From contig MU619262.1 in assembly GCA_025201805.1 (NCBI GenBank), positions 128,677-192,676 of the forward strand: a stretch of DNA of 64,000 bases. Direction: 5' to 3'. The notes under the pieces were generated by a model. The model was not told where the DNA came from. It worked only from the letters and a program-made list of their open reading frames with translations, and ran no database searches. The stretch's first letter is position 1; every line of letters begins with the position of its first letter. The translations under genes and the position numbers were made by a program. This document shows, piece by piece, positions 362 through 6,833 of the stretch. Source of the DNA: Parasitella parasitica NRRL 2501. Taxonomy: Eukaryota; Fungi; Mucoromycota.

Positions 362-1778
362 TTATTTTATCAAGCAAGCAGCAGCAACAACAGAAATAGC
401 AATAATTATTATATATGTAGTAGAAATAGTAGAATTCTTAGATGTAATTGTTGGATCTTGTCTTCTAAGCACTCAAAAATAGAAATGGAATTAGGCTCCT
501 CGCTCTCCAAGATAAACTGTAGTATAAATGTATTTACCTGTTATAAGCAGGCTCCTTGGCATGCAGTGTTTTCCAACTGTTACTAACAAAAAGTGTGTTG
601 CTTTTCAAGCTGGACACAATCCAATCTCCAACAGTAAGACCACCAAATAAAGGTAAAACACCAGCACCTTGCTTTCTCCCAAAAGTAACAAACATGGCAT
701 CTGGAATCTTTTTGTATTCGGCCGTTGGTTTTTTCTTTTTGACAGCAATCTGCACAATATTCTCAACTACAACGGGCGCATGTGCACCGATACGATAAGC
801 CAACTTGGTTTCGTTGAAATCAGCAGCATCCCCTAAAACAAACACATTGGGTAAACCAGCATGGTCTACTTGGAATGTCTTCTTGACCTTGATGTAACCA
901 TTTGTGTTTACAATCTCGGCACCGAGGGAAGAGTTCTTTAACCAAGCTGTCTCAGGACGATTACCAAAAGCCAGCAACACAAGATCCACATTTTCAATCA
1001 TCTGTCCCTTGTTTGTTTTAACGATACCTGCTTCAGGGATGTAAAAATGTTCCTTGAGATCACTGGGTAAATTGACAGTATCGTTAAAGATGGTATCGAT
1101 TTTGTTCTTTTGTGCCAAACTCAACAAGTTTTTTCGTAATTTAGCATTGGGGCTGCTCGCTTCGTCCAAAAAGTTATCCTTGCCATGTACAATTGTGATT
1201 TTCTTCTCAGCATAAACATCACGGATCTCACCGGCCAATTCGATACCAACAGGACCACCACCAACAATCACAATAGAGTTTGCAGATTTGACACTGGCAC
1301 GGAGCGATTCGAGATTGGCATGTGCCGCCTCATAGGTCAAAGCAGAGGCTTTGGCAGGGGAAGGATAATGTGTTCCGGTAGCAATAACCAAGTAATCATA
1401 AGCAATGCGACTGCCATGTTCTTCAATGGATTGATCCAATACAATTTCACCCTTTTCAAGCATCACCGCACTAGCTTGAACAACCTTGTTACTTTTGTTC
1501 TGAAATAGATCTGTATAAGGAATCAAGATGCGTGAATCCCAATCCAAAACAGCAGATCTGAGACCTGCAATAGCGTGATAAAAATGCGATTTCTTACGTT
1601 ATATTTATTTGAGTGAGTGGCCTGTGCATACACACAAAATATTTTAACTTATACATACCTTTTCAACTAGAATAATACGATGTTCCTGATCGTTGGATTT
1701 GGCTAATGCTTTTTCCAGGGCACCGGCAACTGTAATACCAGCAAAGCCACCACCGATGATAACAATGTTTTTGGTCAT
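362..1778 (-). CDS. AIF/AMID (FSP1/AIFM2-like) FAD/NAD(P)H-dependent oxidoreductase
   Basis: ATG at 1778 gives MTKNIVIIGGGFAG (first Rossmann motif). Intron 1593-1658. Second Rossmann motif IVIVGGGPVGIELAGE, plus ATG and GD motifs. The unspliced stop is at 534; a canonical intron at 465-537 extends the CDS to TAA at 362 with a hydrophobic tail. Confidence 0.85.
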
Positions 1779-3287
1779 TTTTGAAAGGCGTGTGGAAGAC
1801 AAAAAGTGCAAAGATAGAGAAATCAGAAAAATAAGCTATTTTAGATCACCAGAAACTAGGCTGGGCCCTTTTATATGCTCGTACGGCATAGACGGTCCAA
1901 TAAAGCAAGCTGGAATCAAATATTGCCGCTTGCGTCCGGATTATTAATGCTTATAAATTCATCATCTGGCAGGCTACATGGTGAATTGCTATAACTAAAT
2001 AAGCAAAGTTTTCCGCATTGAAAAATTGGAAAAAAGTAGTGTAAATACGAAAAATAATCAACGCTACTTGACGCATATTTTTCATTTCGAGCTGGATATT
2101 CATAGGGTTTTAAAAGCTAAAGAGTCCTTTAAGATTATTCCTCTTTGATTTTCTTAATTCGGCCATCAATGTCATGATCCAAGAGATCAGAATAACCTTC
2201 GTGATTTATCTGTTCTTCTTTCCCTTCCTATACATTTATTACCATGATCCAATAAACATACTTTTATACGTCACTTATCCCTCATTGATACCTATAACCA
2301 TATATAAAATAGCAATCACAATTGACAACAACAACATCTAATAGCTTAACCTTAGGATCAAACCTTATAACCTATATATCTCATTGGAGCCTCTTAATCT
2401 ATCACAGTACATTTCTTTAATCACGCCTGCTTTTTCACACATTCATCTTCATTGAACTGCAATCCTTAACCACAAACCGTATCAGTCAGCCGAACTGATT
2501 ACCACTTGACAAGCTATCATTGATGTATACAATACACTACTGGATCCGCTATTAATATAGATAAGTTGGTTGAAAACGAGCATAAAACCTAAATCAACTT
2601 CAAAACATAATAAAGCTATCCATCAATCGGGTAAACCTGGTATAGACCAATATGCTTGCCGAGAAAATAATGGCTTACAAATAACGCCCCTCTTTCTTTT
2701 AATGTTATCAAGTATCATTGTAATTGCTAAATAAATATCCTTCTCGTGTCATTGCATCTATAAAAATTTATGATTGAAATAAATTTATGGTTATAAATAC
2801 AGATTCATCGTATCAAGCTCAAATGCTTGGTGGTTTTCGAGGAGAGTAGATGATTTGATAGCATCATAAATTAAAGCTTGGCGTTCATTGAAGGGCAAAA
2901 GATCGTTTATTTGCCTTCCCATAATGATATGTTTGGGTTTTTGCAGAAAATCTGTCATTTCTAGATGGTCAATTTACTCTAAATTTTGAAAATAAAAATT
3001 ATCATTTTCAACAACATGAAATTGACTTGATTAAAACCCATCATTAATTATTCATGCATACATAATGCAACAATATGCAACTTGACATGGCCGTGTTTCC
3101 AAATAAAACAAAACAGTTTATATAGCAAGACTTGACGCAAAGTCAGCTTTTTCTTGTATCATACAGTGCTTTTACACGCGCAGTATTTTTTAATCATTTT
3201 CTTTATAGTGTACAAATGGGAAATGACTACTATTCTTTATAATCTAGCAATAGCGGTATTATTACCCAAAAATTCAGATCCATCGAG

Positions 3288-4550
3288 TCAAGCTGAAGCA
3301 ACCTTATAGCCAAGCGTATTCAAAGAGTTGGCCAAAGCTCCTTCAACCTTCTTGATGTGTTGGCGCTCATCTTCCATGACAGAGATACCCATGTGACCAA
3401 TTCTGAAGTATTTGGTAGCACACTCTTTGAGAATACCACCAGCAATTTGAACACCCTGTCCGGCCAAACCACCGACAAGTTCACCAACTTGAACGCCCTC
3501 AGGAAGCCAGACGGCTGTCATGCCGTTTGCGGAACATTCTTCGCATTGGGCTACTTGCTTAAGGCCCCAGTTCTTGATGGTTTGTCTAAATTGAGAAGCA
3601 ACCTGACGATGCTTTTCAAAGCGAACCTCAAGGGGCTGGCTGAGAACCTTGGTCAAAGAAGCATGGAGAGCATAGATAAGTTGAACAGCAGGAGTGGCAA
3701 AGTAAGAGGGTTTACGAGCTTCATAGGCTTGCATAACAGGGAGCCACTTGTTCCAGTTGGAGTAGTATGAGGGGATAGGAGTCTTTCTATCTTGGACAAC
3801 TTGAAGAGCCTTTTGGCTGGCAACAACAATGGAGAGACCAGGGGGAACACCGAGACCCTTTTGAGAACCTGTGATAACGATATCCAAGTTCCAGGCATCG
3901 AAACGGATCTCCTCAGAACCGACGGAGCAAACGCCGTCAACAACAACCAAAGTGTTGGGAGAGACAGACTTGACAGTCTCTGCAACAGCCTTGATATCAG
4001 AAAGGACACCAGTACTAAACATTTGAAGTGTTGGTTATCCAAAGGCAATGAACATTTGAAAGGATTAGAGACTTACGAGGTGTCAACGTGTGTTACAGTG
4101 ACAAATTTGTATTGGGTCTTGGAACAAGCTTCCTTGATGGCTTCTTGGCTAGGGCGCGAGCCAACTTCAGCACCGAGTTGAGTAACCTTGGCACCATAAG
4201 TTTCAAGACTATCATGCGAGGTTAGCAAATATGCTTTCGTGTCTAGCTGGACTAACTTACCATTGAGCGAAATGAGAGCCGAAATAACCAGTGTTGAGAA
4301 GGAGGACCTCATCGCCTTGTTCAATCAAGTTAACCATCATATCCCAACCAAGGGTACCTGAGCCAGAGACAATGAAGGGTTGTGCGGTCTCCGAAATGAC
4401 AGCCTTACGAACCATCTCGATAGTCTCGCCAAAGATGGGAACAAAGTTGGGATCGACATGAGATGTAGCAGGAGTTGCCATGGCAGCCAAAACATCTTCA
4501 TGAAATTCGATAGGGCCAGGGATCATACAAATTTTACGGTCAACAGTCAT
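3288..4550 (-). CDS. AGX1: Alanine-glyoxylate aminotransferase (class V PLP enzyme)
   Basis: MTVDRKICMIPGP start; SGSGTLGWD, VTHVDTSTGV, VDGVCS, TGSQKG (PLP lysine) and FRIGHMG motifs. Introns 4209-4260 and 4015-4076. Confidence 0.93.
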
Positions 4551-5025: not shown

Positions 5026-5788
5026 TCAAAGGTGAATCACATCGGACTTGTCCAAAGACAAAGGTGCACCATTAGGATGCTCTTTTTCGTACTGAATGCA
5101 AGCAGCTTTCAGGTTGCTTATGAAGGCGGGTACACCTGTCTTTGCAGCCCAATTAATGACGGATATAGGTATGCTTCCCTATCATAAAATTAGCCTCCGT
5201 TATTTTATATATTGCAATGCCATGGTGATGTACCTTGGGGTCGTCAAAGTAATCCATAAATACAGAACATCCTTCACCGTCCTGTCCAGTAGCGATACAT
5301 ATATTTTGCATGTATGTATCAATACGAATGACGCCCTTACGCTCAGGGAAGCTTGCAGAGGGCAAAGACTCGCCGAGAATCACTTGATACTGTTTGCCAT
5401 CTGATTCTGTTACTACTTTTCTTTCGATGGTATATGCGTAATCTCTGTTGGAAAGCGGCCAAGGATACTTCATTTCAAAATGGTTGCCATGATGAGAGTC
5501 TTCATGAGCTGGTTCTACCTTGAAGTATTGATGCGATTGCATATTCTTGTCCCATTTCTTTCTAAATTCTAAATCCAAGTAGACATGAGCTAGTGTATCT
5601 GATTTGACATCGCTCCAACCACCAAAAGATCGATATTCGTACAGATTCGGATTTCTGTCGTGCGCAGGTCGGCGATATACAGTGAAATCTGAATTTTTGA
5701 CATAAAACTCCCATTTTCCATCGAGCTTAGTCTGTTCTTTGCATTGTTTGACAAAGTCGCGAAATTTATCGTCAGGGAAAAATGGCAT
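5026..5788 (-). CDS. START-domain lipid transfer protein, PCTP/StARD2-like
   Basis: DLEFRKKWD, KYPWPLSNRDY and YFDDPK|GSIPISVINWAAKTGVPAF motifs typical of PCTP. One intron at about 5179-5233; TGA at 5026. Confidence 0.85.
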
Positions 5789-6833
5789 TACGACAGTGAA
5801 AGAGAAAAGGAAAGAGAGACAAAGACAAAGACATCCTATATATAGAGCGTATCGATGACTCCCTTTGGATGATTCGAAATACGTTTTTTTTCTAATCATT
5901 GCGTCCAAAACGGTAGGAGGTTGTGACCGCAGCTGAAGTCTGTTATCTGGCCCCTTGTAGTCGAATGACCTATAGTTAAGCTTGGCTTGCCTCTTGTCCC
6001 AACTATCCTTAATGCAAAATATTGGTTGGATAATATTACGCAAAAGACGAACAATTGCTAGCGTCATATAATACACTGTTTTATTGATAATAAGCTTACG
6101 TTAATCGCAGTATATTACTTTGTATAGCAATACCAAGTATCTTTGCATTCTATTTTAACCTCAAATTTTGGAAGTTTTCTGTGAAAGACAGGTTTGCAGT
6201 TGTTTGCGTTCCACAGCAAAAATGCAGACTGAGATGAAAAAGACAACGTTCATGTAAAACGGAAGCTACGACCTCGGTTACAACAGTGTCGTGCAAGACA
6301 TTTGATTTATCACAGATATGGTTAATCAATCACCAATGAGGCAATATTTTCAGGGAAACCTGCTTTACATTTCCTGGCTCATCTGAGAGCCAACGACTAA
6401 ATTAACGTAATAGCCGGGATGCGAGTAATATCAACTATCTTTGGCTATCAAAAGAGTACGGCATCTACAAGCACTCAGAGGGAAATTCGCTAGAATTTGA
6501 CAATCATTCATGTCATAAATGTTTAATTTTGCTATATGGCATCAACTTGCCTTGAGCACAAACCTTATAACCATAATTTGACTTAAAAGAGGTATTTGTT
6601 TCTGTCCCAATGACAAAGTGAAAGTGACAGCATCACTGGAAGAAGGGGCGATCAACACATGTTCATGCCAGATTATAGTTATATCGTATCCCTATTTCAG
6701 CAAGCAGTGCAGCTACACAATAGTTTCCTTGCTCACTAGCCTATTCGCCGCCTCGAAAACTCTCTAGATGAACAGCGCCTTTATTAAACCAGTTTTACTG
6801 TGCTATTTGGAAATTAATAATCGAGGATCACCA

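What the first reader, a model, noticed from the sequence alone, without database searches (positions are those of the whole stretch)
3237..3290. Cryptic peroxisomal targeting signal (ARL) behind the AGX1 stop codon, reachable by TGA-CT readthrough
Seen: the minus-strand CDS ends ...GCT TCA GCT TGA, then continues in frame CTC GAT GGA TCT GAA TTT TTG GGT AAT AAT ACC GCT ATT GCT AGA TTA TAA. This encodes X-LDGSEFLGNNTAIARL*. ARL is a canonical PTS1, while the normal end (VASA) has none. Established: TGA followed by CT(A) is a leaky stop context that produces PTS1-extended peroxisomal isoforms of metabolic enzymes such as fungal PGK and animal MDH1/LDHB, and human alanine-glyoxylate aminotransferase is peroxisomal. 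Inference: this gene makes a major cytosolic and a minor peroxisomal glyoxylate-detoxifying enzyme by readthrough. I am not aware of this being described for an AGX in Mucorales. The context is TGA-CTC rather than the optimal TGA-CTA, so efficiency may be low.
Basis: partly seen in the sequence, partly recalled or inferred. Interest (0 to 1): 0.85.

Follow-up and report, generated by a model that had tools for sequence, protein, structure and literature searches.

The report
Readthrough peroxisomal tag on fungal AGT
A Mucorales alanine-glyoxylate aminotransferase gene ends in a leaky TGA stop followed by a short in-frame tail ending in the peroxisome-import signal ARL. The same arrangement is kept in distant relatives, so a minor peroxisomal form of the enzyme is very probably made by stop-codon readthrough.

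Summary
The three-exon minus-strand AGX1-type aminotransferase gene ends at TGA (3290-3288), followed by CTC. Sixteen in-frame codons then end in Ala-Arg-Leu, directly before TAA (3239-3237).

This is not chance. A shuffled 3' flank gives an in-frame ARL end in about 1 of 10,000 trials. Five other Mucorales orthologues keep TGA plus an in-frame tail ending in ARL: Mucor plumbeus, Backusella, Thamnidium, Radiomyces and Phascolomyces. Their tails differ in sequence and length (7-16 codons), and the ARL codons differ synonymously.

The seven homologues without a signal-bearing tail end in TAA (5), TAG (1) or TGA-TTT (1). One of the TAA cases is this genome's own paralogue. In Mucor mucedo there is no stop at that position and the frame runs straight into SRL.

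An unrelated, unnamed soil fungal lineage shows TGA CTA plus [A/S/G]RL in 14 of 14 loci (9 distinct sequences).

A spliced, mismatch-free transcript contig runs 71 nt past the second stop.

This is a new cargo and a new clade for a known mechanism, UGA-CU readthrough exposing a cryptic PTS1. The readthrough product and peroxisomal import remain unshown.

The parts
4261..4550 (-). AGT exon 1 (ATG at 4550; GT donor begins at 4260)
   Evidence: Gene model. The transcript contig joins 4261 to 4208 exactly.
4077..4208 (-). AGT exon 2
   Evidence: The contig pieces and both joints (skipped ends CT..AC on the + strand, i.e. GT..AG on the minus strand) are.
3291..4014 (-). AGT exon 3, through the last sense codon GCT (normal C-terminus ..GYKVASA)
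   Evidence: Pfam Aminotran_5. Yeast AGX1 2bkw is the best solved relative.
3285..3290 (-). Leaky stop context: TGA (3290-3288) followed by CTC (3287-3285)
   Evidence: TGA-CT is also found in M. plumbeus, Backusella and Thamnidium and as TGA CTA in 14/14 metagenome loci. UGA-CU is the core element per PMC4207609.
3240..3287 (-). 16-codon in-frame readthrough extension, ending in the PTS1 tripeptide Ala-Arg-Leu (3248-3240)
   Evidence: Orthologous tails all end in ARL, with diverged linkers and synonymous ARL codons.
3237..3239 (-). Second stop, TAA, directly after ARL, so ARL would be the free C-terminus
3166..3236 (-). 3' UTR covered by the transcript contig. It holds a 13-nt block (3216-3204) identical in M. 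plumbeus.

Best explanation
The gene encodes an AGX1-type alanine-glyoxylate aminotransferase of 382 residues, which is cytosolic by default because it has no targeting signal. Its stop codon is UGA followed by CU. This short context lets a near-cognate tRNA occasionally decode the stop. Such ribosomes add one residue plus 16 more and finish at the next stop, giving a 399-residue isoform whose free C-terminus is -Ala-Arg-Leu, a type-1 peroxisomal targeting signal. The PTS1 receptor PEX5 would import this minor isoform into peroxisomes. Because AGT is a dimer, it could enter together with untagged subunits. There it can transaminate glyoxylate to glycine. One mRNA therefore supplies two compartments. 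Shown here: the sequence anatomy, its protein-level conservation, its link to TGA, and that the mRNA covers the tail. Inferred: the readthrough itself, its rate, PEX5 binding, import, piggy-back import and the physiological role.
For: 1. Anatomy is as described.
2. Conservation under divergence. M. plumbeus has TGA CTT and a 16-codon tail. Backusella circina has TGA CTA and 13 codons. Thamnidium elegans has TGA CTT and 14 codons. Radiomyces and Phascolomyces have TGA ATT and 7 codons. All end in ARL directly before TAA. The linkers are unalignable between genera and length differences are whole codons.
3. ARL is encoded by GCT AGA TTA, GCA AGA TTG, GCA AGA TTA, GCG CGT CTT and GCT CGG TTA. The constraint is therefore on the peptide, not on the RNA.
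4. Link with stop identity. All tails follow TGA. Homologues without a tail use TAA (Mycotypha, Cunninghamella, Zychaea, Syncephalastrum, own paralogue), TAG (Umbelopsis) or TGA TTT (Benjaminiella). Fisher p = 3e-5 on distinct sequences.
5. In Mucor mucedo, a member of the same clade, there is no stop at that position and the ORF runs into ...SRL.
6. An independent unnamed soil fungal lineage, sister to Ascomycota sequences in the tree, has TGA CTA YAT GGN ... [A/S/G]RL plus a stop in 14/14 loci, 9 of them distinct. Tail lengths are 7-12 codons and Leu codons vary: CTA, TTA, CTC, CTG.
7. A spliced contig with 0 mismatches covers 3166-4521, with no splice near the stop.
8. The same genome uses -SRL on a malate synthase and has Pex14. 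Glyoxylate metabolism and PTS1 import are therefore peroxisomal here.
9. Chance expectation is 0.011% for ARL.
10. Two Logan gene calls near M. lusitanicus read the stop position as W and continue to ...VARL.
Against: There is no direct evidence of the extended protein or of import. The trait has been lost in several lineages, so it is dispensable. Radiomyces and Phascolomyces have A, not CU, after TGA, so the CU context is not universal. No stimulatory RNA structure follows the stop (z = 0.71). PGK and TPI, the classic fungal readthrough cargoes, show no cryptic PTS1 in this genome, so readthrough targeting has not been shown for any other gene of this organism. The transcript evidence is a single assembled contig from one run whose RNA status is only inferred from its being spliced.
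Confidence: 0.8

Rival explanations
1. Chance: the in-frame ARL is an accident of an AT-rich 3' UTR and nothing is made from it.
For: About 0.25% of shuffled flanks give some PTS1-like end, so a genome of some 10,000 genes holds dozens by chance. Several relatives lack the tail.
Against: ARL specifically recurs behind TGA in five more Mucorales species despite unalignable linkers, with synonymous codon changes. A PTS1-type end ([A/S/G]RL) behind TGA CTA also recurs in 9 distinct sequences of another fungal lineage. No such end occurs in the other two frames.
Confidence: 0.02
2. The conserved stretch is an untranslated 3' UTR element, such as a protein or RNA binding site or a polyadenylation element, that only looks like coding sequence.
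For: Window and M. plumbeus stay about 80% identical for some 40 nt beyond the second stop, including an identical 13-nt block. Part of the near-stop conservation between close species is therefore not coding.
Against: Between genera the nucleotides are not conserved. Only the frame, the stop type and the encoded ARL are. There is no significant fold. An RNA element would not require a stop directly after ARL, or TGA before the tail.
Confidence: 0.03
3. A PTS1 isoform is made by another route than readthrough: alternative splicing that removes the stop, or ribosomal frameshifting.
For: Both routes are documented for fungal cryptic PTS1: splicing for GAPDH and PGK (Freitag 2012, as summarised in PMC3798809), and +1 frameshifting for pre-duplication IDP2 (PMC4526572).
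Against: The tail is in frame 0 with the CDS in every species, so no frameshift is needed. In Radiomyces and Phascolomyces only 4 codons separate TGA from ARL, which leaves no room for an intron. The transcript contig is collinear across the stop. The strict link to TGA is expected for readthrough, not for splicing.
Confidence: 0.05
4. Readthrough occurs, but the tail serves something other than peroxisomal import, for example a degradation signal that clears readthrough products, or a regulatory C-terminus.
For: C-terminal extensions from readthrough often destabilise proteins (general knowledge). Import is not shown here.
Against: The only invariant part is the C-terminal tripeptide, which fits the PTS1 consensus (S/C/A)-(K/R/H)-L as quoted in PMC3338719. 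It is always placed at the very end. AGT is peroxisomal in humans and in Magnaporthe oryzae. The same genome tags malate synthase with SRL.
Confidence: 0.07

Closest known systems
Readthrough-derived PTS1 isoforms of Ustilago maydis Pgk1, Tpi1, Rpe1 and Art1 (Freitag 2012; Stiebler 2014, PMC4207609)
   Same: UGA followed by CU, a short in-frame tail ending in a PTS1, and one transcript giving cytosolic plus peroxisomal enzyme. The tail is conserved in some fungi and part of the ordinary ORF in others, which matches the pattern seen here with Mucor mucedo.
   Different: The cargo is alanine-glyoxylate aminotransferase, which is not in their list; the words aminotransferase, glyoxylate, Mucor and Rhizopus do not occur in that paper. 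The hosts are Mucorales and an unnamed soil lineage rather than Basidiomycota and Ascomycota. PGK and TPI of this genome lack the device. Two Mucorales genera have TGA A instead of TGA CU.
Mammalian LDHB and MDH1 readthrough extensions (Schueren 2014, PMC4359377; Hofhuis 2016, PMC5133446)
   Same: A UGA CUA context and a hidden PTS1. A small fraction is extended: 1.8% and 4%, as quoted in PMC9513677. The enzymes are oligomeric, so untagged subunits may be co-imported.
   Different: Animal rather than fungal, and redox-shuttle dehydrogenases rather than a glyoxylate aminotransferase. Readthrough is measured there and only inferred here.
Cryptic 3' UTR PTS1 of pre-duplication yeast IDP2 and the hard-wired PTS1 of IDP3 (Yanagida 2015, PMC4526572)
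   Same: A cryptic PTS1 in the 3' UTR is reached by a translational error. Gene duplication then leaves one copy with the peroxisomal role and one without, and in some lineages the signal becomes part of the ORF. Here clade A keeps the tail, clade B lacks it, and M. mucedo has fused it.
   Different: That case uses a +1 frameshift; here the tail is in frame 0 behind UGA. The enzyme family is different.
Peroxisomal AGT of humans (non-canonical C-terminal PTS1) and Magnaporthe oryzae AGT1 (PMC3338719)
   Same: The same enzyme family, and peroxisomal localisation through the C-terminus and the PTS1 pathway. The glyoxylate-handling role in peroxisomes is shared.
   Different: Those proteins carry their weak signal within the normal ORF. 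Here the normal ORF has none, and a canonical ARL is hidden behind the stop.

Membership tests
Functional stop-codon readthrough exposing a cryptic PTS1 (Freitag/Stiebler type) | UGA stop followed by CU | tested here: met
   TGA CTC in the window. TGA CTT/CTA/CTT in three orthologues. TGA CTA in 14/14 metagenome loci. Exception: TGA ATT in Radiomyces and Phascolomyces.
Functional stop-codon readthrough exposing a cryptic PTS1 (Freitag/Stiebler type) | Stop-free in-frame tail whose last three residues fit (S/A/C)(K/R/H)(L/M), directly followed by a stop | tested here: met
   16 codons ending in ARL, then TAA.
Functional stop-codon readthrough exposing a cryptic PTS1 (Freitag/Stiebler type) | Protein-level conservation of frame and signal in orthologues while the surrounding UTR diverges | tested here: met
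   Six Mucorales species including the window, with synonymous ARL codons and whole-codon length changes. Nine distinct sequences of a second lineage.
Functional stop-codon readthrough exposing a cryptic PTS1 (Freitag/Stiebler type) | The mature mRNA contains the tail, with no earlier polyadenylation and no splice across it | tested here: met
   A spliced contig with 0 mismatches covers 3166-4521. This is one run, and contigs cannot exclude minor isoforms.
Functional stop-codon readthrough exposing a cryptic PTS1 (Freitag/Stiebler type) | The extended protein is actually produced | not testable with these tools
   Needs a reporter, ribosome profiling or mass spectrometry.
Functional stop-codon readthrough exposing a cryptic PTS1 (Freitag/Stiebler type) | PEX5-dependent import of the extended form into peroxisomes | not testable with these tools
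   Only context is available: Pex14 is present, and a malate synthase ends in SRL in the same genome. The tail (16 aa) is below the 30-residue minimum of complex prediction, and read-through proteins may not be submitted.
AGX1-type alanine-glyoxylate aminotransferase (class V aminotransferase fold) | Aminotran_5 domain over Pfam's cut-off | tested here: met
   PF00266, 49.5 bits against a cut-off of 21.5, on exon 3 alone.
AGX1-type alanine-glyoxylate aminotransferase (class V aminotransferase fold) | Closest characterised or solved relatives are AGTs | tested here: met
   2bkw, yeast alanine-glyoxylate aminotransferase 1, E 9e-50, followed by other AGT/SGAT structures. UniRef names the orthologues alanine--glyoxylate transaminase.
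AGX1-type alanine-glyoxylate aminotransferase (class V aminotransferase fold) | Alanine:glyoxylate transaminase activity | not testable with these tools
   Needs an enzyme assay. The bacterial NCBIfam equivalogs are all far below cut-off, as expected for a fungal protein.

The most novel reading that the evidence does not exclude
The hidden PTS1 behind a UGA stop may be an old, evolutionarily labile switch of fungal AGT. On this reading it is shared by descent between Mucoromycota and a Dikarya-side lineage. It has been hard-wired repeatedly (Mucor mucedo SRL; perhaps the direct -ANL and -GAL ends in Glomeromycota and Mortierellomycota) or lost after duplication (clade B, TAA). It would work at low readthrough rates because tagged/untagged heterodimers piggy-back into peroxisomes. 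That would make AGT a natural series for studying how translational errors become fixed targeting signals.
Probability: 0.3. Interest if true: 0.7.

Novelty: new member of a known kind. Interest (0 to 1): 0.58.

Why it matters
Readthrough-made peroxisomal isoforms escape gene annotation and transcriptomics. Every database entry for this gene stops at 382 residues.

If confirmed, this adds a glyoxylate-detoxifying and glycine-forming aminotransferase to the peroxisomal inventory of Mucorales. I found no readthrough targeting described for that order in the held literature.

It also offers a compact natural series for studying how a translational error becomes a fixed targeting signal:
- a hidden signal (most of clade A, Radiomyces, Phascolomyces)
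- a fused signal (Mucor mucedo)
- a lost signal (clade B, Mycotypha and others)
- an independent lineage with the textbook TGA CTA context

Orthologues exist in the tractable Mucor lusitanicus and M. circinelloides, so the bench tests are straightforward.

Tried and rejected
- RNA structure as a readthrough stimulator: the 111 nt around and after the stop fold no better than shuffles.
- Other cargoes in this genome: PGK (contig C186, TAA) and TPI (contig C36, TAG after its last intron) have no in-frame PTS1 behind the stop. This genome gives no second example.
- Earlier notes of this scan: nothing near the site and nothing on readthrough or PTS1.
- Naming the metagenome lineage: a second protein search found only unnamed metagenome proteins above 63% identity. 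Archaeorhizomycetes is only my guess.
- Umbelopsis as an outgroup: TAG and no signal, so the trait cannot be pushed to the base of Mucoromycotina with these data.
W may be TGA read under another code table or a true TGG.
- Complex prediction with PEX5 was not attempted. The tail is shorter than the tool's 30-residue minimum, and proteins read through a stop may not be submitted.
- One script was killed by the sandbox and was rerun without scipy.
- One paper query was rejected for a colon and was resent.

Full report
**1. What is in the sequence**

On the minus strand lies a three-exon gene: 4550-4261, 4208-4077 and 4014-3291. Exon 3 carries a class V aminotransferase domain (PF00266). Its closest solved relative is yeast alanine-glyoxylate aminotransferase 1 (2bkw, E 9e-50), followed by other AGT and serine-glyoxylate or serine-pyruvate aminotransferases.

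The CDS ends ..GYKVASA, then TGA (3290-3288). After that come CTC and 15 further sense codons in frame. The last three encode Ala-Arg-Leu (3248-3240) and are followed at once by TAA (3239-3237).

**2. More than chance**

Shuffling the 300 nt after the stop 200,000 times gave an in-frame tail ending in any (S/A/C)(K/R/H)(L/M) in 0.25% of trials and in ARL in 0.011%. Alone, that would still allow a chance hit somewhere in a genome. The decisive evidence is comparative.

**3. Orthologues**

A protein search with exon 3 (by reference) found homologues throughout Mucorales. A tree splits the Mucoraceae-type copies into two clades:
- Clade A (support 100/98) holds the M. plumbeus orthologue (94/96 and 228/241 identical to the window's exons 1 and 3), which stands in for the window's gene here, plus Thamnidium, Backusella_a, Mycotypha, Benjaminiella_b and a Mucor mucedo copy.
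- Clade B holds M. circinelloides, Rhizopus and others.

The window's own genome has one copy of each. A START-domain gene lies upstream of the clade A copy in the window, Backusella, Thamnidium and Mycotypha, which supports orthology.

I fetched the DNA behind the stop for 12 homologues, using all 12 permitted look-ups.

| Species / locus | Stop and next codon | In-frame tail |
|---|---|---|
| M. plumbeus (L004) | TGA CTT | 16 codons, ends ARL TAA |
| Backusella circina (L005) | TGA CTA | 13 codons, ends ARL TAA |
| Thamnidium elegans (L006) | TGA CTT | 14 codons, ends ARL TAA |
| Radiomyces spectabilis (L008) | TGA ATT | 7 codons, ends ARL TAA |
| Phascolomyces articulosus (L009) | TGA ATT | 7 codons, ends ARL TAA |
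| Mycotypha | TAA | no signal |
| Cunninghamella | TAA | no signal |
| Zychaea | TAA | no signal |
| Syncephalastrum | TAA | no signal |
| Umbelopsis | TAG | no signal |
| Benjaminiella_b | TGA TTT | no signal |
| Own clade-B paralogue (L002) | TAA | no signal |

Between genera the linkers cannot be aligned and differ in length by whole codons. ARL is spelled GCT AGA TTA, GCA AGA TTG, GCA AGA TTA, GCG CGT CTT and GCT CGG TTA. That is the signature of selection on a translated peptide.

Stop identity and tail presence are tightly linked (Fisher p = 3e-5 on distinct sequences).

Between the window and M. plumbeus the tail has no indel. The first indel, of 5 nt, falls just after the second stop.

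**4. A fused version**

In the clade A copy of Mucor mucedo (L013) there is no stop at the homologous position. The ORF runs on from ..GYK through 12 more residues to -SRL and a TAG. The hidden signal has become constitutive there.

Two gene calls from public-run assemblies, nearly identical to the M. lusitanicus protein, read W at the stop position and continue 14-15 residues to ..VARL. I could not fetch their DNA. W may be TGA read under another code table.

**5. A second lineage**

They share 47-57% identity with the query. They form a well-supported clade with no named member; the nearest named proteins are about 63% identical. In the tree the clade sits beside Ascomycota sequences.

Every one has TGA CTA (T/C)AT GGN, a tail of 7-12 codons, and ARL, SRL or (once) GRL before the next stop. 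Their Leu codons vary among CTA, TTA, CTC and CTG. The scan's search patterns lay inside the enzyme, so the result is not biased towards the 3' end.

**6. Transcript**

The only public run holding this sequence gave one 1,243-nt contig with 0 mismatches. It lacks both introns exactly at the modelled junctions, so it derives from mRNA. It is collinear from 4521 to 3166, which is 71 nt beyond the second stop. Contigs cannot show minor isoforms or true 3' ends.

**7. Mechanism**

In Ustilago maydis, UGA followed by CU is sufficient for efficient readthrough. UAA or UAG in its place reduces it, and the two bases after the stop matter most (PMC4207609). The window's TGA CTC fits this.

No special RNA fold follows the stop.

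The same genome has Pex14. It also has two malate synthases, one ending in -SRL and one in -PRL. PTS1 import and glyoxylate metabolism in peroxisomes are therefore in place.

AGT is peroxisomal in humans and in Magnaporthe oryzae through its C-terminus.

The best reading is dual targeting. The bulk of the enzyme is cytosolic, and a minor readthrough isoform is imported by PEX5. Dimerisation may add co-import of untagged subunits; that step is inference.

**8. What is not shown**

The readthrough product, its rate, PEX5 binding, import and physiological role are all unshown. The trait is dispensable in several lineages. Two genera lack the CU context. PGK and TPI in this genome carry no such device.

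**9. Novelty**

In the held literature, no paper links AGT or AGX1 with readthrough, or Mucorales with readthrough targeting. Freitag 2012 itself and its supplements could not be read here. All database entries for the orthologues stop at 382 residues. This is a new cargo and a new clade for a known mechanism, with an unusually clear evolutionary series.

**10. Procedure notes**

- No search was run with the joined spliced protein or with a protein read through the stop. Exons were searched by reference.
- The exons were joined only inside a local script, to define the model.
- For the one whole-length scan I used the database protein P0222. It is identical to the window in exons 1 and 3 and is labelled Parasitella parasitica. 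That match suggests the source organism.

Noticed in passing
G000:C2:329649-330415 (L002 1160-1944): A second AGT paralogue (clade B) in the same genome has an extra intron in the last exon. It ends ..GYKA TAA with no PTS1 behind it. This looks like a cytosol-only copy after duplication.
   Followed up: partly
L013 2780-2832 (Mucor mucedo): The clade A copy has no stop at the homologous position and ends directly in -SRL. It sits on a long branch (1.04), so it may be fast-evolving or specialised.
   Followed up: partly
L015-L029 (soil metagenome contigs): An unnamed fungal AGT lineage uniformly has TGA CTA YAT GGN plus a short tail ending in ARL, SRL or GRL. Its taxon is unknown, and in the tree it is sister to Ascomycota sequences.
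   Followed up: partly
P0050, P0058, P0057, P0071, P0080: AGTs of some Glomeromycota end directly in -ANL, and those of Mortierellomycota in -GAL. These may be weak in-ORF PTS1-like ends. Their localisation was not examined.
   Followed up: no
window 3204-3216, minus strand: A 13-nt block just after the second stop (TTTGTACACTATA) is identical in M. plumbeus, while the UTR further on decays to about 40% identity. It may be a 3'-end processing or regulatory element.
   Followed up: no
G000:C17:190925-192145 and G000:C1:185685-186915 (L036, L037): There are two malate synthase paralogues, one ending in -SRL and one in -PRL. They may differ in peroxisomal targeting strength.
   Followed up: no
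window 5153-6076 (-) and 534-1547 (-): The neighbours are a START-domain protein upstream, syntenic with Backusella, Thamnidium and Mycotypha, and a pyridine nucleotide-disulphide oxidoreductase downstream.
   Followed up: partly
P0228, P0229: Public-run gene calls translate the AGT stop position as W and run on to ..VARL. Automatic callers using another code table can accidentally reveal readthrough tails, which could be a cheap way to mine for them.
   Followed up: no
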